Translations under genes and position numbers: made by a program
Notes under the pieces: generated by a model
The model's database searches: none
Told to the model about the DNA's origin: nothing
Seen by the model: only the letters and a program-made list of their open reading frames with translations
Shown: positions 10,591 through 52,734 of the stretch, piece after piece
How the letters are laid out: every line of letters starts with the position of its first letter
Position numbering within the stretch: position 1 is the stretch's first letter
Assembly: GCF_006345805.1 (NCBI RefSeq)
Contig: NC_042998.1
Coordinates: 149,172,001-149,236,000 of the forward strand
Direction of reading: 5' to 3'
DNA length: 64,000 nucleotides
From: Octopus sinensis
Lineage: Eukaryota

Positions 10591-10617
10591 TCGTATATAT
10601 ATATATATTATATATAT

Positions 10618-10661
<44 letters not shown>

Positions 10662-10672
10662 ACGACAGGCTT

Positions 10673-10720
<48 letters not shown>

Positions 10721-10722
<2 letters not shown>

Positions 10723-11003
10723 TAATATAAGGGTAGCAAAAAAATTCTAGAAAAAATTCTCCGCTACCAGCGGTCTAGTGAGAAAGAAAAGATAGTCTAA
10801 GACTATATAATATACATTCAACAATATAAGGAATGGCCATATAGGACATTCGACTCACTAGAAAGAGCAGCCAAAACTCATACCCCTAAATAGTTGTAAT
10901 TCTGAAATAGAAAGAGAATTACAAAAATTTAGCGGTATGAGTTTTGGCTGCTCTTTCTAGTGAGTCGAATGTCCTATATGGCCATTCCTTATATTGTTGA
11001 ATA
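10721..11003. mobile_element. Truncated fold-back copy of the HHR-monomer family (no ribozyme core retained), flanked by (AT)n
   Basis: Inverted arms 10817-10903 / 10915-11003 (attcaacaatataaggaatggcc...tgtaattct and its reverse complement); homologous to 29050-29230. Confidence 0.8.
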
Positions 11004-13579: not shown

Positions 13580-13658
<79 letters not shown>

Positions 13659-13673
13659 CAGATAGATAGATAG

Positions 13674-13711
<38 letters not shown>

Positions 13712-16250
13712 ATGAAGAGAAAATAAAGACAGAAGAGTGTAGAGGAATAAGAAAGGGAATGAATGAATGAATGAATGAATAGAAAAATAAACATAAAAGA
13801 TTTTATCAGGCAATGCCATTACGAATGAATGAATCAGTTGAATGAGTGAAAGAAGTAATGAGAAGAACACGAACAGGAATGAAAAACAATGTATGAAAGA
13901 AAAATATCAATAAAGAGTTAAATGCAATACAAAAAACAACCAAACGAAACCAAAACAAAACAGGGTGAATGAATGAGTGAGAAAAGAAATTATTGAATAA
14001 ATAAAACGGAAGAATAAATGAGAGTATGTTTGAAGGAAAGAAGGAAAATGAAGTCTGGAAAGAACGGAGGAATGGAACAAGAATGAGTTAGTAAATTGAT
14101 TATATGAAAGAATGAATGACAGGATAGATAGGTAAACAAAGGAATTATGCGACATAGATATTGTGAATGAATAAATCAAGTGAATACGTGTATGAATAAA
14201 TGAAAAGAGAACGAACGAAAACAGGAGAGTTTAAAATATTTGAATGATGAGGATTAGTGAAAAGATTTTGAATGAAATACAGAAGGAATGAATGAATATA
14301 TAAGAGAAGGAATTATCGAAGAAGGAAAGAATGAATGAGAGTAGGCGTCATAGATGGATTAAAACAAAGACTGAAAGAAAATGAGGGTAGGAGAGTACCG
14401 AGGATTGAGATAGGAATGAATTTATCAACTGAATGAATAAATGACAGGATAGAGAAATAAATTAAAGGCTATTACGTGATAATAGCATAACGAATGACTC
14501 AACTGAAGAAATGAATAATTTCATTCAAAACTATTTGAATGAAAAGAATGTGGAGAAGGAAAATTGAATGAAATGAAACAATGAATAAATGAACGAATGA
14601 ATGAAAGAAAGAGTGCTAGTAAATAAAACAGAAGTGGAACTTTAAGAATGAGTTAATAAATGAATGGAAATATTGTAAACAAATGAATGAAAGAGCAGAA
14701 TGAATCAATAAAAGGAATGACAAAATAAACAAATGAATAAATAAGAAAACAATGAATGAATGAAAGCGACGAAATATGCTTCATTGAAAGAAATATAAAA
14801 TAAAATGAAAGAATGCAACTGAACATGGAATGAAAGAAAAATAGAGAAGTAATGTATTACTGTATAGTAACGGATCAGAATTTAAGAAGGAGAGAAAGAA
14901 ATGAACGAAACCAGATGAGTGAAGAAATATAAACGAAGGAATTAATCAGTTAATCAATGCTTGAATGAGAGAGAAGAAATGAAGGAAAGACGGAAGATAT
15001 ACAGAAAAAAACACAAGACAGGAAAAAACTCGATAGTGAGGAAGAAACAACGAATGAACGAATATCTGAATAAGTAAAGAAAAAGATAAATTTAAGAATG
15101 AATAAATCGTCTATTTAGCAAAGGGAGAAAGGCATGAATGTGCAAATGAGCGAATGAAAAAAGAAATAAACATATAAGTGAGTGAATGATTTTAATTAGT
15201 CAATGAAAAATGGGACTACGTGGGAATGAATTATTGAATGAGTGAATGAAAAATGAATTTATTAAAGAATGAAAGAAACAAAATCAAATGAATGAATGAC
15301 TGTATGATTGAATGAAAACAGAAAATTTATAAATGAATGAATTATTGTATAGGCGATGGAAGAAATGAAAGAATGAATAAATGAACAAATGAAGCAAGAA
15401 TGAAAAAAGTGGATATAAGTGTAAAACTGAATGAGTAAATGAAAGAATTTCTGAATGAATAAATTTCTCAGCGGATGAATGAAAACCGAACGAATTACTG
15501 AAACAAAGTTAAATGTATGAATTAATAAAAACAGAAAATTTTTTAATGAATGAATTATTGAATGAAAAGCGAAGGAACCACTGAATAAATTTAAGAATCA
15601 AGGAAGAGAATATTAATGACTGAAATAGAGATGTATATAAGAATGAATTATTTAATTATTGAAGGAAAAACATAGCATGAATGAGGGTAAGAATGAATTG
15701 AATGAGTGAATGAAAACAAAAATGTATATATGAATGAATAAATAAATGAAAGAAATTATAAAAGAACAAATGAGAGAGTTAAAAAGAAAGAATTTATGAG
15801 AAGAGCAACTGATAGACATATAGAGGTATAGATATAAGTATTGTTAAAAACAACATATACATGAATTATTAAATGAAAAATGAACGAAAGACTGAAGGAA
15901 TGAATGAAGGAAAGAAGGAACGAATGAATGAACGAATTAAGGAACGAGTGAAAGAAATATGGAAATAATAAGAGAATAAAACGACAGCTTAGGAAGATAA
16001 AATTCCAAATATATAGGAGGAATAAATGAATTTTATTTCATAAATTTAAGAAACAGAATGAAAAGAAAAATGAAAGAAAATGTAAATGAATGAATGAAGA
16101 TATAAATGAAAGAAAGAACGAATGAAAAAACACGAAGGAAAACAACATGTGGCGAAAAATAGAGAAGAAATTTGGATGGAAAACACGTTGAAGATGATGG
16201 CGACTACAAGCAAATAGAAAAATTTGCCTTGAATGAACGTCTCTTAAAGA
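11860..16250 (+). repeat. ~4.4-kb purine-rich (A/G) low-complexity tract of degenerate GAAA/GAAT units with embedded (GATA)n and (GA)n
   Basis: Directly visible strand asymmetry; a short repeat gaagaaggcacgaaa recurs three times near 12528-12625; minus-strand ORFs are F/L/S-rich artefacts. Confidence 0.9.
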
Positions 16251-16369
16251 GGTTCTATGTCTATAAAAGCAACACAGACTAAAACTAACGATATTGCTGG
16301 AGCGTGGTGTTTTTAGTTTTTGTTTTTGTTATATTTTTACAAGGTTCGATCGATAGTTCCGGCGGCTTG

Positions 16370-17349
16370 TTGTACCAGCAGTGGTTAGGTGGTGGCGGAG
16401 GGAGGAGGCTGACTGTAGTCGTGGAGGCGGCGGCGATGGTGGTGGTGCTGGTGCGATAGTAGGGGTGTGGAGGTGATGCTGTAATGGTGGTGGGAGTGAG
16501 AGTGGGGCGGTAATGACCGTAGTCGTAGTAGTGGTCGTGGTGGTGGATGTCGGAGTATTGGAGGAGGGGGTGTAGTTGTAGTGGTGGTAGAAATGGTGAT
16601 GGACGTCGTAGTAGTGTTGGTGATGGTGGTGATGGTGGAAAGGTTGTTGATGGCGGTAGCGGCGGTCGCCGTGGCGAAGGTATTGGAGGTGAGGAACGTG
16701 CTGTAGTCGTGGTGGTGGTGGTGATAGCGCATAAGATAACTTGTGGTAGCGTTGTTGTTTAGCCCCTGGTCGGTCGTAAACGAACCGATGTACAATCAAA
16801 GGCGTTTCAGCCGTGACTATCCCACCTTTATCTCTATTCGATGCAGTGGGCTGCGGTTTAAAAATCATTTGCATTTAACCCCAGGTCAACACGAAGCCAG
16901 CACACTTTCGATCAACGACAATCCAGCCATGACAATCTCATCTTATTCCTACGTTCAACGAGCCCTATCCCACGTTAACCGACGCGAGCCCCTTTTTTTC
17001 TAAGTATGTAGGAGTGATTTGACTAGTATTTCTAGCAGGTTCGGCCGAAAGAGCACATTTGAGGCTCCGTTCGAGACTGTATAGGCGCCAGCAGAATGGT
17101 AGCATTGATATTACCTAAGTAATTTGAGTTGTGGTAGAAGTTGTACAAATAGGTGGGTTGTATTGGTTGTATGGGTTGTGGTATTAGTGTTCTGCTAAGG
17201 AAATCCATTACAACAGTACAGACGTTAGTATAAATGGTTGTGGTACCACAAGCGAAAAGGTGGAAGTTACAGTTGTGGTCATAGCTGAAGTGGTATTCTC
17301 TGACGCAGTATGAGGGTCTGTACCAAAGTTTATGCAGCAGTAGTAGTGT

Positions 17350-17391
<42 letters not shown>

Positions 17392-17718
17392 CGTTAGTTG
17401 TGGTATTGGAGAGCCGGATGTAAGTTAAGGTGGTAGCAGAAGTGTTGTGGTATAAGTTATAATAGTTATAAAAGTTGTGTTGGCTGCAGTATTTATCATT
17501 AGCAGTAGTAGTAGTAGAGGGTTGATGTGGTATCGGTCGAGTTGTAAGTGGTATGGTACGGGTCGTAGTACATGTAGATGTGGTGTGTTGTCAGTCCATG
17601 TTATAGTAGTGATTTTAGTAGTAGTAGTAGTAGTAGCTGTGGTGGTGGTGGTGGTGGTGGTGGTGGTGGTGGTGGTGGTGTTTGTAGGTAAAGCCGACAG
17701 ACCGTGGTAAAATTTGTG

Positions 17719-17754
<36 letters not shown>

Positions 17755-18860
17755 GTATAGTAGTAGTAGTAGTAGTAGTATAACGATGGAGTTGATGGTG
17801 GTGGTGGTGGTGGTAGTGGTGGTGGTAGTGATGGTGATGGTGATAGTGATAGAGGTAGTTGCGGGGAATTGCGATGAAGCTGGAAGATGATGACGGTGGA
17901 GGCAACGGCGACGGCGACGGCGACGGCGTTTATGTCGGCCGCTTCACTGCTGCTGCTGCTTGCTACGAGAGGAAGCCAGATATGGTGTGTAGAACGGTGG
18001 AGGTGGCAGCGGTGGTGGGTGGATTTGACGTGCTGAATGTGACTGGCTGGTGTGTCGGCTGGCTGGTGTGTCGGCTGGCTGGTGTGTCGGCTGGCTGGTG
18101 TGTCGGCTGGCTGGTGTGTCGGCTGGCTGGTGTGTCGGCTGGCTGGTGAGTGGCGGCGGCTGGAACATGGCGGATGCTGGTCGCTTGTTGTTGTTGTTAT
18201 TGGCAGTAACGGATGGATGGTGGCGGTGAATGTGGTGGTGGTGATGGTGGTGGTACTGGTGGTTTTGGCGTGACGGTGGCGTGTTGGTTGGTTGGTTGGT
18301 TGGTTGGGTGGTATAGGGACGTGTGGTGGGGTGAGGCTTCCGTGATGGTTTCGACCGCTTTTGTGGTAAAAGGCAGATGGCAGTGATGCAAGCTTTGTTG
18401 TGACGGTGGCGACGGCAACGGCGGCAGCGACGGCAGCAACGGTGACGCTGTCGGTAATGAAAGCAGTGGCGGAGGTGGAGGCAACGATAGGGGGGGAAGG
18501 GAGAGGAGAGTTAACTGGGTGGGTGGGAGTACGATGGCGAAGAGGCGGCAGTGGTTTACTGAAGCCATCGGTGGTGATCATTGCAATGATGGTGACTGCG
18601 CTAGTGGTGGTGGTACTTGCGTGGTAAATGGTATTACTGGTGGTGGTGATCATGACAGAAATGGCGGTGGTCGCGTTGACAATGGTATGACCATTGTGAC
18701 GCTACAGTGGTATTACTTATGGTGGGGATACTACTGATATCTGCGATGGTATTGATGGTACCGATGGTATGGGCAATGGTGGTTAGTAGTTGTACCATTG
18801 GTACTGGCGATGGTGCTCGTGGTGGTGGATAGTTTTAATATTGGTATGGGCGACCTTCTC
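16370..18860 (+). repeat. Degenerate (GGT)n/(GTA)n low-complexity domain
   Basis: Visible trinucleotide runs. Confidence 0.85.
18041..18148 (+). repeat. 16-bp minisatellite (ggctggctggtgtgtc), ~6.7 copies
   Basis: Units counted directly at 18041, 18057, 18073, 18089, 18105, 18121 and a partial at 18137. Confidence 0.95.
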
Positions 18861-18909
18861 TGGTGACACGCCAGTCTTACAGTTGTAGATTGTGTTATAG
18901 TTGTTATTG

Positions 18910-19230
18910 TTGCTTAGCCCCATCTCATCCTTATCTCATCCTGTCTTATCCCCTGATTAGAGCGTTAATCAATCCCAGTCATATCTAATGTGTCCTGCCC
19001 AAGGTCGGGCGTGATTTGAGAGAGATTTGGCTCTTATTTCTAGGAACTGATTGACCTATGATCAATGGCATTACCAGCCGTGGCCAGTACATCTTATCCC
19101 TATATTATCACTAGAAAATGTTGCCATATTACCAAGTGTAGTTTTCAAAGCGTAGGACGTGATTTGAGGGAGATTTGGTTGCTATTTCTAACAACCTGAT
19201 CGACTAAGTAGAGGCTGCCTTTAGTGTCGC
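18910..19230 (+). mobile_element. Dispersed repeat family (ccagccRtgaYcatc / gtgatttgagggagatttggYtgctatttct); related fragments at ~205-300, 1590-1660, 7545-7700, 16755-17100
   Basis: Shared motifs visible among these loci (acaatccagccatga is identical at ~1631 and ~16918). Confidence 0.55.
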
Positions 19231-19262
19231 GGGTTGTGGTGGTTTGGTACTATTAGTGTCAC

Positions 19263-19319
<57 letters not shown>

Positions 19320-21568
19320 GGTGGTGGTGGAAGCGGTGGTAGTGGCGTTAACTGTCCGTGCATGATCGATGCGACACCGCCGTTACCAGTCATCGTCACC
19401 GTTTGCAACACGCCATCATCGTGTGACACGACCGATATATACACCCACACCCACATACATACAGAGGTGCATAAATACATACTCGCATACATACATACAT
19501 GCATATATATATATATATATATATATACACGTACATACATGTCTATATACACGCATACATACACATGTACAGACACATATGTGTACATATATCAAATTTA
19601 ACATTTAATACGTATATATATATATATATGTGAGTGTGTGTGTGAATTACATTTAATATGTAAGGATATATATATACACATCTGTGTATATATGTATGTA
19701 TTTCCTCTCGTGGATGTATATATATATATATATACACACATACACATATATTCTGTGTGTATACGTATTTCCTATCGAGAATGTATATTTGTGTACGTAT
19801 ACACACACACATATATGTATCAATGCAGTGTATACATATATACACATATTTATATACACACGCACGTACAGAGGTATCCATCAAGCGACACCTTAACTAG
19901 ACACACACACTACACACACACACACACATACATACACATTTTACTGTCACCTTTGCCCCGCTCCCCCTAACATCTCCGTCACCATTCCCACCAGCACAAC
20001 TGTCACCTTTAACCTCGTCATCACCGTCATCACCACCACCAACGCCGCCACTGCCGCCACCAGCACCACCACCATTACCACCTCCACCACCATACATTGC
20101 TGTCACCTTTAGCCTGCAGCCAGCACCACCACCAACCGCGACACCACCTTTACCACACTCATAACCGCTGACACCTTTTACACTCTCACCGCCGCCGCCA
20201 CCACAACCACGGCACTGTACCACAATCACCACCATCACCACCATCACGTCACAACCATTACCGCCACCACCATCACCATCGCTAGATGTCAGCAGCAGCA
20301 ACAGAAACGTGTCAGCCACATAAGCTGGAAAGGAGACAGTTTATCGCCTCTCACCTCTTAACTCTTCTCCTCTTCCTGCTCCTCCCCTCTGCCAACCCTA
20401 GAGACATACACATACATACGCATATACACACACATTGGAACATATAAAGACACACACACTGAGACATATAAACACACACCGATAAAAACACATACATATA
20501 TATATATGTATAAAACCACACGCATCACTCACATACATGCTATAAATACAGACATACACGTACAGATAGAAACACATACAGAGATACATACATTCACACA
20601 CACACACACACACATATTCATTCGCGCCCCTCATTTACCCACTCCTATGCAACCCCACACATTCCCCTCAATACATCCTTCTCGCTCCCCTCCCTCCCTC
20701 TCTCCCTCTCTCATTCTCCTTTTTTCGCCTCCCTTCTCTTCCCTCATCCTTCTTTCTCCCGCAACCTTTCTCGTCTTTCTACCTCCCACCACCATCGTCG
20801 ATTCCCGCCGACGACGCCACTGCCGTCAACCCACATTTATTGCATACATACGTACATACATACATATATAGAGACATACATTTACACATACACAATCTCA
20901 CATACAGGAACATACACGAACATTTACACACAGTCATTCACTCCGTCTACTTCTTCGTGTCTCATACACTATACACACACACATTACAGAGCTACTCGCA
21001 CACACTCTTATACATATAAATTACATACATAGACACACATATACACAAACACACAGTCACATCACATGTTTTATCCTTAGTCTTTCTACGTATGTAACAC
21101 AATCATGCACATACATGCACACATACATATATACACAATATACATACTATAGATAAGACCAACGGTTCTTGCAGATACACACATAAATAAATACACATAT
21201 TCACACAGTGTTAAAGAGAGCACCACCACGCTCTCTCTCTCTCTTTCTCCCTCTCTGTCACACACACACACACATTTAAATACACATACAGGTACACAAT
21301 TCACAGTAACACCTCGTACGTACATTCGCAAACGTTTCTGTGAGTGTATAAGTATGTACTACGTATGTATGTACGTACGTACGTACGTACGTATTTATGT
21401 ATGTATGTATGTGTTGATTCATACACATACATACATACACACATATACATGAATATAGATTGTTACTCATATGAAAAGAGAGTATTATCACACTTTAAGC
21501 ACATACATGCATACATACATATACAGTAAACTATTTCTCTCTCTCACACAGACACACATATATACACG

Positions 21569-21612
<44 letters not shown>

Positions 21613-21698
21613 CATATACACACATACATATACACACATATATATATACACACATACTTATATATACACATATATACGTATATATATGTATATGTATG

Positions 21699-21751
<53 letters not shown>

Positions 21752-22217
21752 CACATACATATACATATATATACACACGCACACATAGGCACAGCTGTTG
21801 GTCTCATCACATATACTGCTTTCACCATCTCGGTACATATACATACACAATTACACATTTACACTATCATCACAGCACAACACACATACATACACATATT
21901 GGCGTCTGTGTACATATGCACGTATATATATATATATACATTATTATACTTTCAAATACACATATTGAGCAATATTACAAATTTCACAATACGCACGTAC
22001 GTACTCACACACCATGTACGCATATATATATACATATATATATATGCATAAACATATTCATACACATGCATACACACTATCCACCACCCTCCGTTTAATC
22101 GATTACTATTACGTGTCTGTCTTCAAAACATCTACCCCCCACCATTCTCTTCCTTCCTCTCCATTTCTCTCTGTCTCTCTCACACGCACGTGTACAAGAT
22201 CTTATTTACTCTCCTCT

Positions 22218-28950: not shown

Positions 28951-29039
28951 TATATATTCGCTTGAATTATTTGCTCCGTATGAAATTATTTTTACACTGG
29001 TGGCTGCCATGTTTTGGCGCAAAACGAATCAGTTGCAAT

Positions 29040-29845
29040 CATTAATCAATATCAGGGTAGCAAAAAATTCAAGAGAAATCTTTCGCCACCAGCGGTCCAG
29101 TGAGAAAGAAAAAATAGTCAACAGACTATATAATATACATTCAACAATATTAAGGAATGGCCTTGATAGGGCATTCGACCCACTAGAAAGAGCAGCTAAA
29201 CTCAAACCACTAAATAGTTGTAATTCAGAAACCAAAGGAAAATAAAAACATTTAAGGGTAAATATTTTTATTTTCCTTTGGTTTCTGAATTACAACTATT
29301 TAGCGGTTTGAGTTTAGCTGCTCTTTCTAGTGGGTCGAATGCCCTATCAAGGCCATTCCTTAATATTGTTGAATGTATATTATATAGTCTGTTGACTATT
29401 TTTTCTTTCTCACTGGACCGCTGGTGGCGAAAAATTTCTCATGAATTTTTTGCTACCCTGATATTGATTAATTAATGATTTTTTGGCTAATTCTGAAATT
29501 AAATCAGCAGTTTATATTTGCTGCTGATAAGTTGGCGCGGTGACGGTAGATTTTGAAAATTTAGAATATATATTCTCGAGGCGTCGATACTATCGCCTCG
29601 TGGATATATATTTCCCTGGCTTCTTTGCTGACGAGACAGGCCAGTGGCAAATAGATTTAATTTAATTTAATTAAATCGGTTTGCCAATATGTATGTCGAA
29701 ACCATGCATAGTCCAAAGATGATAAGGGTAAATATTTTTATTTTCCTTTGGTTTCTGAATTACAACTATTTAGCGGTTTGAGTTTAGCTGCTCTTTCTAG
29801 TGGGTCGAATGGCCTGTCAAGGCCATTTTTTAATATTGTTGAATA
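29040..29845. mobile_element. HHR-bearing non-autonomous element: inverted arm (29040-29253) plus ~1.25 direct copies of a ~470-bp monomer (29258-29845)
   Basis: Palindrome axis at aggg (29254-29257); aagggtaaatattttta recurs at 29254 and 29724 (470-bp period); ends in (AT)n. Confidence 0.85.
29622..29719 (+). ncRNA. Type I hammerhead ribozyme, canonical core
   Basis: tctttg-CTGACGA-gaca...tgtc-GAAAC-catgcata-GTC-caaaga; stem II carries a long hairpin insert (tggcaaa...gatttaatt...aattaaatc...tttgcca); predicted cleavage after 29713. Confidence 0.85.
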
Positions 29846-29889: not shown

Positions 29890-29920
29890 ATATATTATAA
29901 TATATATATGCATAATATAT

Positions 29921-30660
29921 TTCAATACGGAGCAAATACTCCAGGAGAAAATATTTCCGAAGATATTATTGACTCTATCATTCTATCATTATCTAGTGTA
30001 ACAATTAAAAATGAGAATAACAGAATCAATAATATAGGCGATTGCAGACCCAAAAAGCATTAGATAGCCGAAGGATTAAAATTAATCAGACATACTAATG
30101 TGTCTTGCTGCTGGAAATAACAGCCAAAACTCTTATTTATATCACCGGGGGAAAAATGATGTTAACTACAGAAACGTGCTAAGACAATCAGCATACATTC
30201 AAGTATTTTCAATCACGTGGACCGGTTTCTGGACTGGTATTATAGCCTAACATGCTATTAAGTTAGACATGGCCTGGACCAATCTTTGGTCGAAACATAT
30301 CTAAGTTTATCTAAGTTTATCTAACACTCCTCAGCACGCGTTACCACGATGGAAAGCCACGACCTATCACGTTGAAGTCTGCGCTACAACTGATTCGTTT
30401 TGCGCCAAAACATGGCAGCCACCAGTGTAAAAATAATTTCAATACGGAGCAAATAATTCAAGCGAAAATATTTGCGAAGATATTATTGAATCTATTATTA
30501 TCTAGTATAACAATGAAAAATGATAATAACAGAAACAAAAATATAGGCGATTGCAGGCCCAAAAAGCAATAAATAGCTGAAGGATTAAAATTAACCACAG
30601 GACATACAAGGTATGTCTACTTGCTGGAAATAACAGTAAAAATTATTATTTAAATCGCTG
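29921..30660 (+). repeat. Two diverged direct copies of a ~517-bp-period repeat; inverted partial copy at 28958-29035
   Basis: ttcaatacggagcaaata occurs at 29921 and 30438, followed by the shared aatataggcgattgcaRRcccaaaaagca. Confidence 0.75.
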
Positions 30661-31688: not shown

Positions 31689-31790
31689 CCTGATGGAGAC
31701 AGATGGTGATTGGGAGATTTGCTGATACATACATACATAAATACATACATACACTCTCATTTATATAGTTGATATATATATATATATATG

Positions 31791-31828
<38 letters not shown>

Positions 31829-31972
31829 TATATATATATTATATATATATATCAACAATCAAGGAACGGCCATAATAGGCCATTCACCCACTAGAAATAA
31901 CAGCCAAAGCTTCAACCGCAAATAAAAGTCAATTCCGTAAACAGAGAAAATTTAAAAAACATTTACCCTGTA

Positions 31973-32079
31973 ATTTCTTATACGATGCACCGTTTCGTCT
32001 GCTGTTTAATGGTAAACTAACCTGATTAAATTAAATCAAGCCAATCTTCCATAGGCCCTCAGATTCTTCAGTAAGAAAT
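31973..32079 (-). ncRNA. Type I hammerhead ribozyme (inverted arm of array)
   Basis: Reverse complement of the array HHR: atttcttatacgatgcaccgtttcgtctg...cagattcttcagtaagaaat. Confidence 0.75.
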
Positions 32080-32781
32080 AGCCACAAGTCGGAACAGATA
32101 TTTTCACGAGGCATTTCCGACCCTGCCAAGTTAATATCTGACCTAAAATTTTCAAATCATCGCACTCGCGCCAAATATTATCGGCAGCAAATAAATATAA
32201 GCCGTCGATTCCATTACGGAATTAACCAGAAAATTCATAATTAATCAATATAGGGTGGCAAAAAAATTTTGTAGAATTTTTTTGCCACCAGCGGCCTAGT
32301 GGGAAAAAATTAAATAGTCATAGACCATTTTTAAGTTCAACATCAACAATCAAGGAACGGCCATAATAGGCCATTCACCACTAGAAATAACAGCCAAAGT
32401 TCAACCGCAAATAAAAGTCAATTCCGTAAACAGGAGAAAATTTAAAAAACATTTACCCTGTAATTTCTTATACGATGCACCGTTTCGTCTGCTGTTTAAT
32501 GGTAAACTAACCTGATTAAATTTTGAACTTAAAAATGGTCTATGACTATTTAATTTTTTCCCACTAGGCCGCTGGTGGCAAAAAAATTCTACAAAATTTT
32601 TTTGCCACCCTATATTGATTAATTATGAATTTTCTGGTTAATTCCGTAATGGAATCGACGGCTTATATTTATTTGCTGCCGATAAATTTGGCGCGAGTGC
32701 GATGATTTGAAAATTTTAGGTCAGATATTAACTTGGCAGGGTCGGAAATGCCTCGTGAAAATATCTGTTCCGTATGTGGCT

Positions 32782-32888
32782 ATTTCTTACTGAAGAATCT
32801 GAGGGCCTATGGAAGATTGGCTTGATTTAATTTAATCAGGTTAGTTTACCATTAAACAGCAGACGAAACGGTGCATCGTATAAGAAAT
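32782..32888 (+). ncRNA. Type I hammerhead ribozyme, first + unit; repeated with GTA triplets at 32878, 33367, 33851, 34338, 34824, 35313, 35801 and 36291
   Basis: atttctta-CTGAAGA-atctg...cagac-GAAAC-ggtgcatc-GTA-taagaaat; 8-bp stem I, extended stem II with internal hairpin, 3-bp stem III; position 10.1-11.1 is an A.C mismatch. Confidence 0.75.
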
Positions 32889-35800
32889 TACAGGGTAAAT
32901 GTTTTTTAAATTTTCTCCTGTTTACGGAATTGACTTTTATTTGCGGTTGAAGCTTTGGCTGTTATTTCTAGTGGGTGAATGGCCTATTATGGCCGTTCCT
33001 TGATGTTGATGTTGAACTTAAAAATGGTCTATGACTATTTATTTTTTCCCACTAGGCCGCTGGTGGCAAAAAAATTCTACAAAATTTTTTTGCCACCCTA
33101 TATTGATTAATTATGAATTTTCTGGTTAATTCCGTAATGGAATCGACGGCTTATATTTATTTGCTGCCGATAAATTTGGCGCGAGTGCGATGATTTGAAA
33201 ATTTTAGGTCAGATATTAACTTGGCAGGGTCGGAAATGCCTCGTGAAAATATCTGTTCCGACTTGTGGCTATTTCTTACTGAAGAATCTGAGGGCCTATG
33301 GAAGATTGGCTTGATTTAATTTAATCAGGTTAGTTTACCATTAAACAGCAGACGAAACGGTGCATCGTATAAGAAATTACAGGTTAAATGTTTTTAAAAT
33401 TTCTCCTGTTTACGGAATGACTTTTATTGCGGTTGAAGCTTTGGCTGTTATTTCTAGTGGGTGAATGGCCTATTATGGCCGTTCCTTGATTGTGATGTTG
33501 AACTTAAAAATGGTCTATGACTATTTAATTTTTTCCCACTAGGCCGCTGGTGGCAAAAAAATTCTACAAAATTTTTTTGCCACCCTATATTGATTAATTA
33601 TGAATTTTCTGGTTAATTCCGTAATGGAATCGACGGCTTATATTTATTTGCTGCCGATAAATTTGGCGCGAGTGCGATGATTTGAAAATTTTAGGTCAGA
33701 TATTAACTTGGCAGGGTCGGAAATGCCTCGTGAAAATATCTGTTCCGACTTGGGCTATTTCTTACTGAAGAATCTGAGGGCCTATGGAAGATTGGCTTGA
33801 TTTAATTAATCAGGTTAGTTACCATTAAACAGCAGACGAAACGGTGCATCGTATAAGAAATTACAGGGTAAATGTTTTTTAAATTTTCTCTGTTTACGGA
33901 ATTGACTTTTATTGCGGTTGAAGCTTTGGCTGTTATTTCTAGTGGGTGAATGGCCTATTATGGCCGTTCCTTGATTGTTGATGTTGAACTAAAAATGGTC
34001 TATGACTATTTAATTTTTTCCCACTAGGCCGCTGGTGGCAAAAAAATTCTACAAAATTTTTTTGCCACCCTATATTGATTAATTATGAATTTTCTGGTAA
34101 TTCCGTAATGGAATCGACGGCTTATATTTATTTGCTGCCGATAAATTTGGCGCGAGTGCGATGATTTGAAAATTTTAGGTCAGATATTAACTTGGCAGGG
34201 TCGGAAATGCCTCGTGAAAATATCTGTTCCGACTTGTGGCTATTTCTTACTGAAGAATCTGAGGGCCTATGGAAGATTGGCTTGATTTAATTTAATCAGG
34301 TTAGTTTACCATTAAACAGCAGACGAAACGGTGCATCGTATAAGAAATTACAGGGTAAATGTTTTTTAAATTTTCTCCTGTTTACGGATTGACTTTTATT
34401 TGCGGTTGAAGCTTTGGCTGTTATTTCTAGTGGGTGAATGGCCTATTATGGCCGTTCCTTGATTGTTGATGTTGAACTTAAAAATGGTCTATGACTATTT
34501 AATTTTTTCCCACTAGGCCGCTGGTGGCAAAAAAATTCTACAAAATTTTTTTGCCACCCTATATTGATTAATTATGAATTTTCTGGTTAATTCCGTAATG
34601 GAATCGACGGCTTATATTTATTTGCTGCCGATAAATTTGGCGCGAGTGCGATGATTTGAAAATTTTAGGTCAGATATTAACTTGCAGGGTCGGAAATGCC
34701 TCGTGAAAATATCTGTTCCGACTTGTGGCTATTCTTACTGAAGAATCTGAGGGCCTATGGAAGATTGCTTGATTTAATTTAATCAGGTTAGTTACCATTA
34801 AACAGCAGACGAAACGGTGCATCGTATAAGAAATTACAGGGTAAATGTTTTTTAATTTTCTCCTGTTTACGGAATTGACTTTTATTTGCGGTTGAAGCTT
34901 TGGCTGTTATTTCTAGTGGTGAATGGCCTATTATGGCCGTTCCTTGATTGTTGATGTTGAACTTAAAAATGGTCTATGACTATTTAATTTTTTCCCACTA
35001 GGCCGCTGGTGGCAAAAAAATTCTACAAAATTTTTTTGCCACCCTATATTGATTAATTATGAATTTTCTGGTTAATTCCGTAATGGAATCGACGGCTTAT
35101 ATTTATTTGCTGCCGATAAATTTGGCGCGAGTGCGATGATTTGAAAATTTTAGGTCAGATATTAACTTGGCAGGGTCGGAAATGCCTCGTGAAAATATCT
35201 GTTCCGACTTGTGGCTATTTCTTACTGAAGAATCTGAGGGCCTATGGAAGATTGGCTTGATTTAATTTAATCAGGTTAGTTTACCATTAAACAGCAGACG
35301 AAACGGTGCATCGTATAAGAAATTACAGGGTAAATGTTTTTTAAATTTTCTCCTGTTTACGGAATTGACTTTTATTTGCGTTGAAGCTTTGGCTGTTATT
35401 TCTAGGGGTGAATGGCCTATTATGGCCGTTCCTTGATGTTGATGTTGAACTTAAAAATGGTCTATGACTATTTAATTTTTTCCCACTAGGCCGCTGGTGG
35501 CAAAAAAATTCTACAAAATTTTTTTGCCACCCTATATTGATTAATTATGAATTTTCTGGTTAATTCCGTAATGGAATCGACGGCTTATATTTATTTGCTG
35601 CCGATAAATTTGGCGCGAGTGCGATGATTTGAAAATTTTAGGTCAGATATTAACTTGGCAGGGTCGGAAATGCCTCGTGAAAATATCTGTTCCGACTTGT
35701 GGCTATTTCTTACTGAAGAATCTGAGGGCCTATGGAAGATTGGCTTGATTTAATTTAATCAGGTTAGTTTACCATTAAACAGCAGACGAAACGGTGCATC

Positions 35801-37112
35801 GTATAAGAAATTACAGGGTAAATGTTTTTTAATTTTCTCCTGTTTACGGAATTGACTTTTATTTGCGGTTGAAGCTTTGGCTGTTATTTCTAGTGGGTGA
35901 ATGGCCTATTATGGCCGTTCCTTGATTGTTGATGTTGAACTTAAAAATGGTCTATGACTATTTAATTTTTTCCCACTAGGCCGCTGGTGGCAAAAAAATT
36001 CTACAAAATTTTTTTGCCACCCTATATTGATTAATTATGAATTTTCTGGTTAATTCCGTAATGGAATCGACGGCTTATATTTATTTGCTGCCGATAAATT
36101 TGGCGCGAGTGCGATGATTTGAAAATTTTAGGTCAGATATTAACTTGGCAGGGTCGGAAATGCCTCGTGAAAATATCTGTTCCGACTTGTGGCTATTTCT
36201 TACTGAAGAATCTGAGGGCCTATGGAAGATTGGCTTGATTTAATTTAATCAGGTTAGTTTACCATTAAACAGCAGACGAAACGGTGCATCGTATAAGAAA
36301 TTACAGGGTAAATGTTTTTTAAATTTTCTCCTGTTTACGGAATTGACTTTTATTTGCGGTTGAAGCTTTGGCTGTTATTTCTAGTGGGTGAATGGCCTAT
36401 TATGGCCGTTCCTTGATTGTTGATGTTGAACTTAAAAATGGTCTATGACTATTTAATTTTTTCCCACTAGGCCGCTGGTGGCAAAAAAATTCTACAAAAT
36501 TTTTTTGGCACCCTATATTGATTAAATATATATATATATATATATATTTCTATGTCTGTGAATGTATATATGCATTTATGTGTGTGTGTGTGTGTATGTA
36601 TGTACGTGTTTGTGTGTATGACTGTATCTGTATGTTTACATATATATATATACATATCGTTTAATGCACAACAGAACAGGGCGCCATTACATAATGCCCC
36701 AAATCCTCCCTCCCGGCCCTCAAAATACAGGACTAGATATTGCGATGACTTGGGAGTCCATATTTTCCTGAAAGAGCTGTGAAATCTACATAGTTTGTAA
36801 ATGTCTTCAAAACTGAACTGGGACTTTGGAGAAATGTTTTCTTTTTTCGAAGAGTGAAAAGAGCATACATGCTATTCCATATAATTTACACACACACACA
36901 TATATATGGGGTGGTCGCTAAAAAAGCGGAAAATTTGAAGGCAAAACTAACAAGCATTAATTTGACCATCAATAAATAATATGTGGTTTCTGATTCGTTC
37001 TTTCTGTTTGCGAGAGTTAATATGATATCACGCTTTGTGACGCTATTCTTTTTTTTTTTTTGTTTCACCTCAAATAGATCTTGTGAAAATACAAAAAGGC
37101 ACTTCACCTTGT

Positions 37113-45160: not shown

Positions 45161-45474
45161 ATACGGCTTTACAATTATAATGTTCATATACAGTTCATTT
45201 GAGTTCGCTGGAAAATGTTTTTTATATATAATCCAGGAATATATAAAAAATATTTTGAAAATCCTCAAACAAACTGAGAAAGTTTTTTTGGAAAATGTAC
45301 AATTCTTCCACTTCTAGTCTTTTTCACTTGGGTAGGTGATTTCAAAATTGACTTTTGAGTGTTTCCATTAACATTAGATTTGCTGCTTTGAATATCACTT
45401 TGTTTCAAACTATGTCGATAGGTATTGCTCACATCTTCATTCTCATGACATGAATATTGGTTGAAATAAACTTT

Positions 45475-48400
45475 TTATACTCTTTTTTTTGTCTAAACTG
45501 ACAATCTCTTTTTTACCATGCCTATCCAAAGTCATGGTTTTATCTCTAATTGACAAAACTTTAAAAGGTCCAGTGTATTTATATTTCAGTGAATTATGAG
45601 CAGCATCGTTACGTACAAATACATGTGTCCAAGAATTTATATCAGAAGGAACAAAAGTTTTAACATGTTGCAATCTTCTTGTAAAAGAAGGAATATCAGT
45701 AAGAAATCTTTTGAGACGAGTTACAGAATCATTAACATCTCCATTAAAAGAATTGGTTTCTTCGAACATTTGACCAGGTAGAGTTAATGTTGTTCCGTAC
45801 AAGAGTTCAGCAGGAGAATATTTTTTTACTCTTTTACTTGTTTCAGTCATTTGACTGCGGCCATGCTGGAGCAACACCTTTATTCGAGCAACTCGACCCC
45901 AGGACTTATTCTTTTGTAAGCCCAGTACTTATTCTATTGGTCTCTTTTGCCGAACCGCTAAGTAACGGGGACATAAACACACCAGTACCGGTTGTCAAGC
46001 AATGCTAGGGGGACAAACACAGACACACAAACACACACACGCATATATATATATACATATATACGACGGGCTTCTTTCAGTTTCCGTCTACCAAATCCAC
46101 TCACAAGGCTTTGGTCGGCCTGAGGCTATAGTAGAAGACACTTGCCCAAGGTGCCACGCAGTGGGACTGAACCCGGAACCATGTGGTTGGTAAACAAGCT
46201 ACTTACCACACAGCCACTCCTACGCCTAGGAGTAAATATTGTAAATTTTCTTTAACAGCACTTCTAATTCCTAACAATACCACTGGTAAGGCTTCTAACC
46301 AACTGTTAGAATCAGAATAAGTTCTTAATGAAGATTTCAACTGCCTATGAAAACTTTCTATCATGCCATTAGATTGTGGGTGATATGAAATTGTACGAAT
46401 TCTATTAATCCCCAACAATTCTGCAAAAAGGCTAGACTCAAATTGTCTACCACGATCTGTTGTCACTGTGTTTGGTATGCCGAATCTCGTCATCCAATTG
46501 GTAAATAAGGTTTTTGCTATAGTTACTCAAGATACGTCCTTGATCGGATAAGCCTCCGGCCATCGCGAAAAACGATCTATACACGTCAACAAATATATAT
46601 TATCCTCACATGGAGTTAAGAGTCCAACTATATCAATGTGGATATGTTGGAATCTCGCATCTGGATTTGCAAATGTACCTAATGGTGCTTTGATATGACG
46701 ATGTACTTTTGATTTTTGACACTGCATACATGATTTGACACAGGAACGAATATCTTTATGCATACCAGGTCCAACAAAACGACTTGATATTAATTTCAAT
46801 GAAGCTTCTATACCAGGATTAGATAAATTATGTAAGGTAGAAAAAAACAAATTTTCAATGCTTTTCAGGCACAAATGGTCTCGAAAAACCTGTAGAAATA
46901 TCACATCAAATATGTGAATTACACGAATGAATTGGCAACAATTTAAATTTTAAAGAAGTTGAATTGGAATTTTTATATAAAGAAAATTCTTTATCTGCAA
47001 CTTGATCCTTAGACATTTCTTCCAAATTTATAGTGTTTAGTGAATTTAATGCATCTACATTCATTCTAGAAAGTGCATCTGCAGCTGAAATTTCAACATC
47101 CTTGATATAATGTATATCCACAGTAAATTGTGAAATAAAATCAAGGTGTCTTATTTCTCTAGGAGAATATTTCTCCGAAGAACTTTTTAATGCATATGTT
47201 AACGGTTTATGGTCAGTAAATAAAGTAAATGACCTACCTTCAATAAGATGTCTGAAGTGTTTAATTGACAAATAAGCTGCTAACAGTTCTCTGCCGAAAA
47301 CACTGTATTTCGTTTCTGGTGCCTTAAATTTTTTGAAAAGAAAGCTAATGGTTGCCAGGAATTACAATGAAATTGCTGTAGAACGCCACCGATTCCAACA
47401 TCAGAAGCATCAACTATCAATGATAATTCTGCTTCAGGAACCTGATGGTTTAAAAGTGTTGCTTCGCATAGTTTATCTTTTATTTTTTTAAAAGCTTGTA
47501 ATTCATTCTCTTTTAAAGTTATGGATTCATTTTTCTTCCTTCTATTTTTCAACAGCTCAGTTAAGGGATATAGGATTTCAGTGACTTTAGGAATAAATTT
47601 TCTGTAAAAATTTACTATCCCTAAAATTTCTCTGAGCTTCCTTAAAGTCTTCGGTACAGAAAATTTTTTAATAGCTTTCACTTTTTCCGGTAATAGTTGA
47701 ATTCCATCTTTATCAATAAGATGGCCCAGAAAAGATATAGTGGGTTCACCAAAAACACACTTCGATGGATTTATCACAATGCCGTATTTCGTCAACCTCT
47801 TGAAAAATTGTTTTAAATGGTCTTCATGTGCTTCTTCTGATGGACTAGCAATGAGAATATCATCTATATAAGCAAATACGAAAGGTAAATTTCTTGTTAC
47901 TTTGAAAAAGTATTTGCTGCGTTCCTCAATCCGAAAGGCATGCGAAGGAATTCAAATAACCCGAATGGAGTGGTAATCGCTGTCTTCGGTATATCTTTCT
48001 CTGCAACAGGAATTTGATTGTATGCTCTAACTAAATCAATTTTTGAAAAAAATAGTACAACCACTCAAAGAAGTTGCAAAATCCATAATGTGTGGAATTG
48101 GGTATTTATCTGCTTTTGTTTTTGAATTAAGTTGCCTAAAATCACCACAAGGACGCCAATCAATGAGATTCTTCTTTACCATAACTAACGGTGTTGACCA
48201 ACTACTACTGGAAGGACGAATTATACCGAGATCCAACATATGACGAAATTCGGCCTTAGCAACCTTCAATTTTTCAGGAGATAATCTTCTCGGCTTAGAA
48301 AAACTTGGTGGTCCTTGTGTGACGATGTGATGTTTTACCGAATGCACACACTTGGTATTTAGAGTTAACTATTTCGTGATATTCGGATAATCCTTCAAAA

Positions 48401-51849: not shown

Positions 51850-52678
51850 CAAAGAGCTGTGAGTGGATTATCACCAATATCAAAGTATAAAAAAACATTC
51901 TAAATGCTCTGAAATCATCAGAGCACCTGAATTTAGCCAGTAAGTTCAACAGACCCTTGATTAGAATCCCAGAAATGTCCACGAGGTCAATTGCAACAGA
52001 TCTCCATGTGTCAGAAGGAACAGTCAGAAATGTTGTCCACGAAGACATCAGATATTAAAATATAAGTCATATGATGTGGAAAGGTCAATTTGTCAGAAAA
52101 ACGAAAGAAAATAAATCACTACATCAGATCTAAAAGGGTCTTAAACAAACTGAAAAATCAAGCAGAAGATTTGATTTAGTTTTTTCTCAAACGAGAAGAA
52201 CTTCGACCAAGATCAAAAAGTTAACAGAAGAAATGCTAAATGGTTATGGGCAGACCCTTCTGAGGTTCCAAGTGTTATGCATCCAAAATTTGTTGCAACT
52301 ATAATGGTTTTAGGGATTGTCAGTAATAAAGGACATGTGGTGCATCCTTACTTCTTTCTACAAGGCCTTAGACTTAACTCTGCTGCCTACATTGAGGTTC
52401 TGGAAATAATTGTTAAGCCCTATATAAGCAGTGTATGCAATGGAAGATCACATGTGTCTCAGTAAGACTCTGCACTATCAAACATGCTGGAAATTTTCAT
52501 GATCACATAACATTTGATGTCCTAATTACACAGGTCTCAATCCATTAGACTATTACATGTGGAGCATTGTTGAAAGAGAGGTCAATGAACACGCCCATAA
52601 CACCAAAGATTCTTCGAAAGCTGGCATAATCAGAGTAATGTCCAAAATGGACCAGGACCACTTGATTCGAGCATGTAT
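51850..52678 (+). pseudogene. Decayed Tc1/mariner transposase, DD37D/maT-like
   Basis: FSNEKNFDQDQKVNRRN, VATIMVLGIVSNKG, Q*DSA, GLNPLDYYMWSIVE; frameshifts and stops. Confidence 0.85.
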
Positions 52679-52734
52679 ATATATATATATATATGCTCGA
52701 ATCAATATGTGTTGTATATAGGTTGAACCCACAG

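What the first reader, a model, noticed from the sequence alone, without database searches (positions are those of the whole stretch)
31851..36525. Tandem array of ~490-bp units, each carrying a hammerhead ribozyme: a retrozyme-like RNA element
Seen: 8 full + units, a partial ninth and ~1.4 inverted units. Each full unit has a type I HHR fold (8-bp stem I atttctta/taagaaat, CUGAAGA, extended stem II, GAAAC, short stem III with a tgca-containing loop, GUA site). Units differ almost only by single-base indels, and no coding ORF is present. Established: Penelope-like elements and metazoan retrozymes carry tandem minimal type I HHRs, and read-through transcripts self-cleave to monomers that can circularise. 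Inference: a recently amplified non-coding element made by rolling-circle reverse transcription of a ~490-nt circular RNA. The long structured stem II insert and the cephalopod-like host may be undescribed.
Basis: partly seen in the sequence, partly recalled or inferred. Interest (0 to 1): 0.95.

Follow-up and report, generated by a model that had tools for sequence, protein, structure and literature searches.

The report
Hammerhead-ribozyme retrozyme array in a cephalopod-like genome
This is a young, non-coding, 491-bp tandem repeat whose every unit encodes a hammerhead self-cleaving RNA motif: a new cephalopod-type family of the already known animal "retrozymes", with insertion scars that match the copying machinery of Penelope-like retrotransposons.

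Summary
Positions 32523-36529 hold 8.2 head-to-tail units (consensus 491 nt). Positions 31851-32522 hold 1.37 inverted units with no substitutions against that consensus. Every complete unit carries a type I hammerhead layout.

Rfam does not call it: there is no hit at gathering score. The motif is still very unlikely to be chance, for three reasons:
- A hammerhead descriptor hits only these elements in 64 kb, against 0.02 hits expected.
- A diverged relative in the same window (copy B, 29041-29842, 66-75% identical) has a fully canonical hammerhead at the homologous place.
- Helices I and II carry compensatory changes between the two.

Three independent insertions (A, B and the array) share one architecture. 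Two head-to-head arms have outer ends at the same two unit positions (~130 and ~236), mostly inside (TA)n microsatellites. This matches published Penelope-like element behaviour: both target strands extended, two internal reverse-transcription start sites, a "tail", and inverted plus tandem copies.

Best reading: a non-autonomous non-LTR retrozyme family in an octopod-like genome, a new member of a known kind. Unusual features are a 63-68-nt helix II, an A.C mismatch at 10.1/11.1 in the array, and a 106-nt "tail". Self-cleavage, circular RNA and true copy number are untested.

The parts
31851..36529 (.). Whole insertion 'C': two head-to-head arms of the 491-nt unit, lying inside a (TA)n microsatellite
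31851..32522 (-). Arm Y: 1.37 units, unit positions 440->491, 1->491, 1->130. Its 3' (outer) end is at unit ~130 (..TTGTTGAT) and abuts (TA)n. Its 5' end is truncated in the apex of helix II. No substitutions against the array consensus.
32523..36529 (+). Arm X: exactly 8 units phased from unit position 131, plus a 106-nt 'tail' (unit 131-236). Its 3' (outer) end is at unit 236 (..ATATTGATTAA) and abuts (AT)n.
32782..32888 (+). Hammerhead 1 (helix I 8 bp, CUGAAGA at 32790, GAAA at 32865, GUA; predicted cleavage after 32880)
33271..33377 (+). Hammerhead 2 (predicted cleavage after 33369)
33757..33861 (+). Hammerhead 3 (predicted cleavage after 33853)
34242..34348 (+). Hammerhead 4 (predicted cleavage after 34340)
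34732..34832 (+). Hammerhead 5 (predicted cleavage after 34826; helix I only 6 bp because of a one-base deletion)
35217..35323 (+). Hammerhead 6 (predicted cleavage after 35315)
35705..35811 (+). Hammerhead 7 (predicted cleavage after 35803)
36195..36301 (+). Hammerhead 8 (predicted cleavage after 36293)
31973..32079 (-). Complete hammerhead in the inverted arm (predicted cleavage between 31981 and 31980 on the - strand)
32463..32522 (-). 3' half only of a hammerhead (GAAAC..GUA|UAAGAAAU). The arm is cut off in the helix II loop, so the CUGAAGA box is missing.
35986..36021 (+). Conserved 15-bp hairpin GGUGGCAAAAAAA..UUUUUUUGCCACC (unit 184-219), 17 nt upstream of the arm-X terminus. Repeated in every unit, e.g. 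32574-32609 and 33062-33097. Candidate recognition element for the reverse transcriptase (inference).
31772..31852 (.). (TA)n microsatellite, left flank of the target
36526..36550 (.). (AT)n microsatellite, right flank of the target
29041..29254 (-). Copy B, arm X: unit 16->~236-240 of a subfamily 66-75% identical to the array
29255..29842 (+). Copy B, arm Y: unit 12->470->~130 (1.25 units); outer end abuts (AT)n
29622..29719 (+). Copy B hammerhead, canonical: UCUUUG / CUGACGA / GACA..63 nt..UGUC / GAAA / C-CAUGCAUA-G / UC|CAAAGA. Full-length sub-threshold match to Rfam Hammerhead_1.
10718..11000 (.). Copy A (85-88% identical to B): arm X 10927->10718 (unit ~14-22->233) and arm Y ~10916-11000 (unit ~44-60->130). 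Both outer ends lie in (AT)n. The hammerhead part is absent (5'-truncated).

Best explanation
The array is a recent insertion of a non-autonomous, non-coding retroelement of the animal non-LTR retrozyme type, in an octopod-like cephalopod genome.

Proposed cycle, with shown and inferred steps marked:
1. The + strand is transcribed as a multimer (inferred).
2. The type I hammerhead in each unit cuts after GUA (array) or GUC (copy B), giving 491-nt or 470-nt monomers. It probably acts as a dimer through its self-complementary helix III. The motif and its conservation are shown; catalysis is inferred.
3. Monomers may be circularised by a host RNA ligase (inferred from PMC7229834).
4. A Penelope-like element's reverse transcriptase/GIY-YIG endonuclease, acting in trans, cuts a (TA)n target. 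It extends both DNA strands on retrozyme RNA from two fixed internal start sites (unit ~130 and ~236). It runs across uncleaved or religated hammerhead sites, so that multimeric copies result. The two cDNA arms end up joined head to head. The architecture is shown in three independent insertions; the enzyme is inferred.

The conserved hairpin just upstream of the 236 start site is a candidate recognition element (inferred).
For: (1) Motif. All invariant hammerhead positions and type I topology are present in 9 array copies and in copy B. The descriptor is expected 0.02 times per window.

(2) Conservation. B and the array are 66-75% identical overall, yet both keep the motif at the homologous site. 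Helix I has 3 compensatory pairs out of 7. Distal helix II has 2 compensatory plus several G.U changes. In proximal helix II, 10.2/11.2 and 10.4/11.4 are swapped U-A for A-U (direct reading).

(3) Rfam and folding. Copy B aligns end to end (1-45/45) to Hammerhead_1; only the 57-nt helix II insert keeps the score low. The hammerhead-constrained fold of the array motif lies 0.8 kcal/mol above the minimum free energy.

(4) Helix III. It is weak as a hairpin (-1.2 and 0 kcal/mol) but forms a 12-bp self-duplex (-19.5 and -8.1 kcal/mol). This is the dimer mode described for newt and PLE hammerheads (PMC4209133, PMC7229834).

(5) Unit RNA. It is strongly structured, z = -5.6 and -7.1. It is non-coding with 36% GC.

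(6) Architecture. Three insertions share head-to-head arms with the same two outer termini, and five of the six outer ends lie in (TA)n. PLE insertions are described as partial tandems with an adjacent inverted 5'-truncated copy, a one-sided 'tail' and microsatellite bias (PMC8557442). A purified PLE protein extends both strands and starts reverse transcription at two internal sites that delimit the tail (PMC11167929).

(7) Hairpin. The hairpin at unit 184-219 keeps 15 pairs in A, B and C, with 2 compensatory and several G.U changes that pair only in the + strand RNA.

(8) Age. Both arms of the array are about 99.85% identical in substitutions, so it was one recent event.

(9) Partner. Octopus genomes hold PLEs (PMC13282606), and retrozymes derive from PLE pLTRs (bioRxiv 10.64898/2026.07.22.740005).
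Against: - No Rfam family reaches its gathering score.
- The array's ribozyme has A.C instead of the highly conserved G10.1-C11.1 (PMC4209133), so it may cleave poorly or not at all.
- No loop-loop tertiary contacts could be identified.
- No PLE coding sequence or PLE-type short hammerhead was found in the window.
- No relatives were found outside the window, so covariation rests on two or three sequences.
- Copy B's arm X abuts a fragment of another repeat, not (TA)n.
- The 'tail' is 106 nt, not the published 30-40 nt.
- No RNA data exist.
Confidence: 0.8

Rival explanations
1. Ordinary satellite DNA. A founder copy, perhaps once a retrozyme, was expanded to 8 units at the DNA level by unequal crossing-over or replication slippage. 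The hammerhead in this array is a decaying relic (A.C at 10.1/11.1) with no present RNA life cycle.
For: - The units are almost identical.
- The A.C mismatch is in all 9 copies.
- There is no RNA evidence.
- Rfam is below threshold.
- Multimeric retrozyme arrays are enriched in satellite-like regions (bioRxiv 10.64898/2026.07.22.740005).
Against: - The array is phase-exact: 8 units from start site 130/131 plus the 106-nt tail.
- The inverted arm has 0 substitutions and ends at the same site as in copies A and B. Crossing-over does not predict this.
- The rest of the core is intact, and the active fold is near the minimum free energy.
Confidence: 0.12
2. Assembly artefact. The copy number, the inverted arm, or both are produced by mis-assembly of noisy long reads from one or two real copies.
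For: Differences between units are almost all single-base homopolymer deletions, as in unpolished long-read sequence. PLE-type tandem/inverted structures are known to trouble assemblies (PMC8557442).
Against: - The inversion junction is asymmetric (unit 440 joined to unit 131), not a fold-back at one position.
- The same head-to-head design is present in the older, diverged copies A and B.
- The array ends at defined element termini on both sides.
Confidence: 0.05
3. A DNA transposon (Helitron, foldback element or MITE) that carries an internal tandem array; the hammerhead string is incidental.
For: - Insertion is in AT-rich targets.
- A hairpin lies 17 nt before one terminus, which recalls Helitron 3' ends.
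- There are long inverted arms.
Against: - The two termini (..TTGTTGAT and ..ATTGATTAA) are not inverted repeats of each other and are not 5'-TC..CTRR-3'.
- The arms are 5'-truncated at different internal points in each copy, as in reverse transcription.
- The hammerhead and the hairpin show RNA-type (G.U) covariation on one strand only.
- No transposase or Rep/helicase is nearby.
Confidence: 0.03

Closest known systems
Metazoan non-LTR retrozymes (Cervera & de la Pena 2020, PMC7229834; Li, Clavereau & Pollet 2026, bioRxiv 10.64898/2026.07.22.740005), which include newt satellite 2 and coral and mussel repeats
   Same: - Head-to-tail repeats of a few hundred bp, from dimers to large multimers.
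- Low GC, non-coding, no LTRs.
- One type I hammerhead per unit, with a short helix III capped by a palindromic loop.
- Unit length (491 bp) and copy number (8) are within published ranges: 51-972 bp, with most families having at most 7 units.
   Different: - Helix II is a 63-68-nt imperfect hairpin instead of about 4 bp plus a loop, so Rfam models miss it.
- The array subfamily has A.C at 10.1/11.1.
- The host is cephalopod-like, and I found no published retrozyme or hammerhead description for cephalopods.
- RNA expression and circularity are not shown here.
Penelope-like elements (PLEs) and their pLTR hammerheads (Cervera & de la Pena 2014, PMC4209133; Craig et al. 2021, PMC8557442; Frangieh et al. 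2024, PMC11167929)
   Same: - Partial-tandem plus adjacent inverted 5'-truncated copy.
- Two discrete 3' termini with a one-sided extension ('tail').
- Insertion into microsatellites, here (TA)n.
- A hammerhead with a self-complementary helix III suited to dimer action.
   Different: - No RT/GIY-YIG ORF, so the element is non-autonomous.
- The 'tail' is 106 nt rather than 30-40 nt.
- Helix I is longer (6-8 bp) than in minimal PLE hammerheads, and there is no extra nucleotide between A9 and 10.1.
- (TA)n bias was reported for Naiads, which lack canonical hammerheads.
- No sequence similarity to a PLE could be tested.
Plant LTR retrozymes and viroid-like circular RNAs with hammerheads (PMC4918200)
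   Same: A non-coding, highly structured RNA unit bounded by hammerhead cleavage sites, with a proposed circular RNA intermediate.
   Different: - The plant elements have type III hammerheads inside LTRs, with PBS/PPT, high GC and a dimeric arrangement.
- Viroid-like RNAs usually carry ribozymes in both polarities.
- Here only the + strand has a ribozyme, and the copies are DNA tandem arrays.

Membership tests
Hammerhead ribozyme, type I | Invariant core: C3 U4 G5 A6 N7 G8 A9, G12 A13 A14, the A15.1-U16.1 pair, and H17 (not G) at the cleavage site | tested here: met
   Array: CUGAAGA, GAAA, A..U, GUA|. Copy B: CUGACGA, GAAA, A..U, GUC|.
Hammerhead ribozyme, type I | Three helices around the core, with helix I open-ended and helices II and III closed by loops | tested here: met
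   Helix I is 8 bp (array) and 6 bp (B). Helix II is a 68- or 63-nt hairpin. Helix III is 4 or 2 bp with a UGCA or AUGCAU loop. The constrained fold lies 0.8 kcal/mol (array) and 5.3 kcal/mol (B) above the minimum free energy.
Hammerhead ribozyme, type I | G10.1-C11.1 base pair at the foot of helix II (highly conserved; PMC4209133) | tested here: not met
   All 9 array copies have A10.1.C11.1. Copy B has the canonical G-C. The family as a whole therefore meets this feature and the array subfamily does not; the effect on activity is unknown.
Hammerhead ribozyme, type I | Helices supported by compensatory changes between relatives | tested here: met
   Three of 7 helix I pairs and 2 distal helix II pairs are changed on both sides. 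Pairs 10.2/11.2 and 10.4/11.4 are swapped. Only two independent sequences are available.
Hammerhead ribozyme, type I | Score at or above the Rfam gathering threshold (RF00163 and its clan) | tested here: not met
   No hit at gathering score or at E<=10 over 5.4 kb. In 150-160-nt searches, B scores 17.5 bits against 34 for Hammerhead_1 (full length), and the array scores 16.5 bits against 48.5 for Hammerhead_3. The long helix II insert costs the score.
Hammerhead ribozyme, type I | Site-specific self-cleavage giving 5'-OH and 2',3'-cyclic phosphate ends | not testable with these tools
   Needs in vitro transcription or RNA-end mapping.
Hammerhead ribozyme, type I | Tertiary contacts between helix I and helix II (canonical forms), or dimerisation through helix III (minimal forms) | tested here: inconclusive
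   No recognisable loop-loop motif. The helix III self-duplex is predicted at -19.5 kcal/mol (array) and -8.1 kcal/mol (B), against hairpins of -1.2 and 0 kcal/mol. This favours a dimer mode.
Metazoan non-LTR retrozyme | Head-to-tail repeats of about 50-1000 bp, each with a type I hammerhead | tested here: met
   8.2 + 1.37 units of 491 bp, with 9 complete motifs.
Metazoan non-LTR retrozyme | Non-coding, low GC, without LTRs | tested here: met
   Longest ATG-ORF is 34 aa and GC is 36%. The flanks are microsatellites, not LTRs. No tRNA-like part. PBS/PPT were not looked for specifically.
Metazoan non-LTR retrozyme | Expressed as unit-length linear and circular RNA | not testable with these tools
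   No transcriptome is available. The unit RNA is predicted to be highly structured (z = -5.6 and -7.1).
Metazoan non-LTR retrozyme | Co-occurs with, and is related to the pLTR of, an autonomous PLE | tested here: inconclusive
   No PLE ORF or PLE-type hammerhead was found in the 64 kb. PLEs are reported in Octopus genomes (PMC13282606, PMC8557442). The host genome could not be searched.
PLE-type insertion (architecture, not coding capacity) | Partial tandem copies with an adjacent inverted 5'-truncated copy | tested here: met
   All three insertions are head-to-head pairs of 5'-truncated arms, and B and C cross unit boundaries.
PLE-type insertion (architecture, not coding capacity) | Two discrete reverse-transcription start sites, leaving a one-sided 'tail' | tested here: met
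   Outer ends recur at unit ~130 (..TTGTTGAT/A) and unit ~236 (..ATTGATTAA) in A, B and C. The interval is 106 nt, against a published 30-40 nt.
PLE-type insertion (architecture, not coding capacity) | Microsatellite target bias | tested here: met
   Five of six outer ends abut (TA)n. B's arm X abuts an inverted fragment of another repeat, followed by (AT)n.
Helitron / TIR transposon / MITE | Terminal inverted repeats, or 5'-TC..CTRR-3' ends, with defined full-length copies | tested here: not met
   The termini are unrelated to each other and are not TC/CTRR. The inner ends are variable truncations.

The most novel reading that the evidence does not exclude
This may be a distinct hammerhead/retrozyme lineage, so far undescribed in cephalopods. 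In it helix II has grown into a conserved 63-68-nt structured domain. A subfamily with an A.C pair at 10.1/11.1 is still the most recently amplified one. Attenuated cleavage would then favour multimeric templates and longer arrays, which fits 8 units in the array against 1.25 in the canonical copy B. The three insertions would be the first genomic footprints showing that a retrozyme, rather than a PLE itself, is integrated by PLE-style dual-strand priming from two fixed internal start sites. A 106-nt tail and a conserved hairpin would act as the recognition signal.
Probability: 0.3. Interest if true: 0.55.

Novelty: new member of a known kind. Interest (0 to 1): 0.45.

Why it matters
Animal retrozymes are thought to be parasites of Penelope-like elements. 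The published support is mainly co-occurrence and sequence relatedness to pLTRs. Here three insertions of one family carry the specific integration scars that biochemistry assigns to a PLE enzyme: both strands extended, two internal start sites, a tail, and microsatellite targets. That gives independent, mechanism-level support for the link.

It also gives a simple way to census such elements by their termini. The family shows that covariance-model screens (Rfam) miss hammerheads with large helix II inserts, so genome surveys probably undercount them. It adds cephalopods to the hosts of this class. The very young array is a good candidate source of abundant small circular RNA in cephalopod tissues.

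Tried and rejected
- **Rfam.** At gathering score over the whole window and at E<=10 over the region there is no hammerhead. Only sub-threshold hits appear in 150-nt searches. The mir-5728 and mir-297 'hits' are the unit hairpin and a (TG/TA)n tract, far below threshold.
- **Relatives elsewhere.**
  - Two metagenome scans were run. The first found 0 hits. The second found 7, all chance: GC-rich soil contigs with no helix I complement, some with G at position 17.
  - Two scans of bacterial/archaeal genome contigs and one of viral contigs found 0 hits.
- **Autonomous partner in the window.** ORF 52693-53094 looked GIY-YIG-like by eye but has no Pfam hit even at E<=10 and no homologues. A similar-looking stretch at 59413-59643 also has no Pfam hit. 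A relaxed scan for short-helix-II or minimal hammerheads found none.
- **Exact look-up** of a window ORF to identify the assembly: not on record.
- **tRNA/SINE origin:** no tRNA-like sequence.
- **Neighbouring ~517-bp repeat D.** A hammerhead-like string on its minus strand has a helix I and core boxes, but no helix II base pairing, no Rfam hit and z = -1.6. I rejected it as a ribozyme.
- **Helitron, MITE or foldback reading:** rejected on termini and truncation pattern.

Full report
**1. The observation**

Tandem Repeats Finder reports one array at 32523-36529: period 488, 8.2 copies, 98% matches. I cut the + strand at the predicted cleavage sites and obtained seven full units of 484-490 nt, with a 491-nt consensus. 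These units differ at 19 single-base deletion columns, nearly all in homopolymers, and at 3 substitution columns. This pattern looks like unpolished long-read error on otherwise identical units.

BLAST of the consensus against the window shows the + array and 1.37 inverted units at 31851-32522. The inverted arm has no substitutions at all against the consensus.

The unit is non-coding: the longest ATG-ORF in a trimer is 34 aa, and GC is 36%. No tRNA-like part is present. (TA)n tracts flank both ends, at 31772-31852 and 36526-36550.

**2. Is the hammerhead real?**

Each unit reads AUUUCUUA-CUGAAGA-[66-68 nt]-GAAA-CGG UGCA UCG-UA|UAAGAAAU. All invariant core positions are present: C3-A9, G12-A14, A15.1-U16.1 and H17 = A. 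The topology is type I.

Rfam does not call it. There is nothing at gathering score in the window and no hammerhead at E<=10 in the region. I therefore tested it in three other ways.

- *Descriptor scan.* I wrote a descriptor requiring helix I of at least 5 bp, CUGANGA, a paired helix II foot, GAAA, a closed helix III and UH. In 64 kb on both strands it hits only the 8 + units, the one complete inverted unit, and one further site at 29628-29713. In 300 simulated windows with the same dinucleotide content, the expectation is 0.02 hits.
- *A diverged relative.*
  - The further site lies in copy B (29041-29842), which is 66-75% identical to the array unit.
  - There the motif is fully canonical: UCUUUG-CUGACGA-GACA..UGUC-GAAA-C CAUGCAUA G-UC|CAAAGA.
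  - In a 161-nt search it aligns end to end to Rfam Hammerhead_1 (1-45/45, 17.5 bits, E 0.078). It is held below the 34-bit threshold by a 57-nt insert in helix II.
  - The array unit gets only 16.5 bits, to Hammerhead_3.
- *Covariation between the two versions.*
  - Three of seven helix I pairs and two distal helix II pairs are changed on both sides, and several more are changed through G.U.
  - At the foot of helix II, pairs 10.2/11.2 and 10.4/11.4 are U-A in one version and A-U in the other (read).

The hammerhead-constrained fold of the array motif lies only 0.8 kcal/mol above the unconstrained optimum; for B the gap is 5.3 kcal/mol.

One defining feature fails in the array. Pair 10.1/11.1 is A.C in all nine copies, where G-C is highly conserved (PMC4209133). 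Copy B has G-C.

Helix III is weak as a hairpin (-1.2 and 0 kcal/mol) but is self-complementary over 12 nt, giving self-duplexes of -19.5 and -8.1 kcal/mol. This is the dimer mode described for newt, axolotl and PLE hammerheads (PMC4209133, PMC7229834).

No ribozyme motif is found on the minus strand.

**3. The unit as an RNA**

The monomers are predicted to fold far better than shuffles: z = -5.6 for the array unit and -7.1 for copy B.

A 15-bp hairpin at unit 184-219 is kept in all three family members. It has two compensatory pairs and several G.U changes that pair only in the + strand RNA.

**4. Three insertions, one architecture**

Besides the array (C) and copy B there is copy A at 10718-11000, which is 85-88% identical to B. 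Each insertion consists of two arms joined head to head.

| Insertion | Arm X (unit positions) | Arm Y (unit positions) |
|---|---|---|
| A | ~14-22 -> 233 | ~44-60 -> 130 |
| B | 16 -> ~236-240 | 12 -> 470 -> ~130 |
| C | 131 -> (8 units) -> 236 | 440 -> 491, 1 -> 491, 1 -> 130 |

The inner (5') ends differ from copy to copy. The outer (3') ends are the same in all three..ATATTGATTAA(T) at unit ~236, and ..TTGTTGA(T/A) at unit ~130 (alignments). Five of the six outer ends abut (TA)n.

The + array is phase-exact. It holds eight units counted from position 131, plus the 106 nt between the two termini.

This matches what is published for Penelope-like elements:
- Insertions are 5'-truncated partial tandems.
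- They often have an adjacent inverted 5'-truncated copy and a one-sided tail.
- They show microsatellite bias, with (TA)n reported for Naiads (PMC8557442).
- A purified PLE protein cleaves and extends both target strands, and starts reverse transcription at two internal RNA sites whose interval is the tail (PMC11167929).

Both arms of C, and arm Y of B, run through intact hammerhead sites. The template was therefore an uncleaved multimer or a religated circle. These data cannot tell the two apart.

C is very young, with about 0.15% substitutions over 4.7 kb. B's arms differ by 2-3%.

**5. Host and partner**

A LINE-type ORF in the window (5231-6157, zf-RVT) has its best named relatives in Argonauta hians (60%) and Octopus sinensis (48%). 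An octopod-like cephalopod host is therefore likely. The best hit overall (72%) is an unnamed JGI contig.

I found no PLE coding sequence or PLE-type hammerhead in the 64 kb. PLEs are annotated in Octopus genomes (PMC13282606, PMC8557442).

**6. Comparison with what is known**

[quoted passage not shown] A 2026 preprint gives consensus lengths of 51-972 bp, finds that most families have at most 7 units, and derives these elements from PLE pLTRs (10.64898/2026.07.22.740005). The present element fits this class.

It differs in four ways:
- Helix II is 63-68 nt long, which is why covariance models miss it.
- The array subfamily has A.C at 10.1/11.1.
- The tail is 106 nt.
- The host is a cephalopod. 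The searchable literature holds no hammerhead or retrozyme description for cephalopods.

No relatives were found in the metagenome, prokaryote-genome or viral collections. Those collections hold little cephalopod DNA, so this says nothing about how common the family is.

**7. Rivals**

- *Plain satellite expansion at the DNA level.* It remains possible for the growth from one unit to eight. It does not explain the shared termini or the inverted arm.
- *Assembly artefact.*
  - It cannot be excluded for the copy number.
  - The inversion junction is asymmetric.
  - The same design occurs in the older copies A and B.
- *DNA transposon.* This reading fails on the termini and the truncation pattern.
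- *Chance motif.* This is excluded.

**8. Verdict**

This is a new family, and apparently a new host group, of a known kind of element. It has some unusual features and carries clear PLE-type integration scars.

Self-cleavage, circular RNA, the identity of the mobilising PLE and the true copy number remain untested.

Noticed in passing
window 28958-29041 and 29919-30656: A second repeat, 'D', of about 517 bp, lies next to copy B. It has unit 1 at 29919-30436 and a partial unit 2 at 30436-30656 (82.5% identical). An 84-nt inverted fragment of D (98.7% identical to 30387-30465) sits between (AT)n and the outer end of B's arm X. This may be a template switch at the unit-236 start site, or B may have inserted into a head-to-head D insertion. 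A hammerhead-like string on D's minus strand (~30225-30340) lacks helix II pairing and has no Rfam support.
   Followed up: partly
window 3062-3421 (-) and 5231-6157 (+): Non-LTR retrotransposon fragments: a weak RVT_1 match, and a 308-aa ORF with a zf-RVT domain. The best named relatives are from Argonauta hians (60%) and Octopus sinensis (48%). This is the basis for calling the host cephalopod-like.
   Followed up: partly
protein P0002 (hit of window 5231-6157): A protein 65% identical to this cephalopod-type LINE ORF is deposited as 'MAG: zinc-binding domain-containing protein [Herbaspirillum sp.]'. It probably reflects host (cephalopod) DNA contaminating a metagenome-assembled bacterial genome.
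   Followed up: no
window 45443-48368 (-): Degenerate Ty3/gypsy-type LTR-retrotransposon pol, broken into several ORFs. Domains seen: RT_RNaseH_2/RT_RNaseH, Integrase_H2C2 and rve.
   Followed up: partly
window 51891-52718 (+): Stretches that look by eye like a Tc1/mariner transposase: an HTH-like piece with weak Pfam HTH hits, and C-terminal DDE-region-like pieces with no Pfam hit. The adjacent ORF 52693-53094 and the stretch 59413-59643 look GIY-YIG-like by eye but have no Pfam hit, and the ORF has no homologue.
   Followed up: partly
window 10575-10680: The left flank of copy A is a palindrome built around a microsatellite: AAGAAGCCTGTCG-(TA)n-CGACAGGCTTCTT. Copy B's flanks also hold a ~20-nt inverted repeat (TATTTGCTCCGTATGAAAT at 28970 and its complement at 29921); that repeat is part of repeat D.
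   Followed up: no
window 12001-16000 and 16001-22000: Composition is strongly strand-asymmetric. GC skew is +0.55 to +0.67 and AT skew is +0.40 to +0.55 at 12-16 kb, flipping to GC skew -0.54 at 20-22 kb. These are long purine-rich or pyrimidine-rich low-complexity tracts.
   Followed up: no
window 36588-36658: A sub-threshold Rfam 'mir-297' match (39.5 bits against 90) lies in a (TG)n/(TA)n tract just right of the array. I take it as a low-complexity chance match.
   Followed up: no
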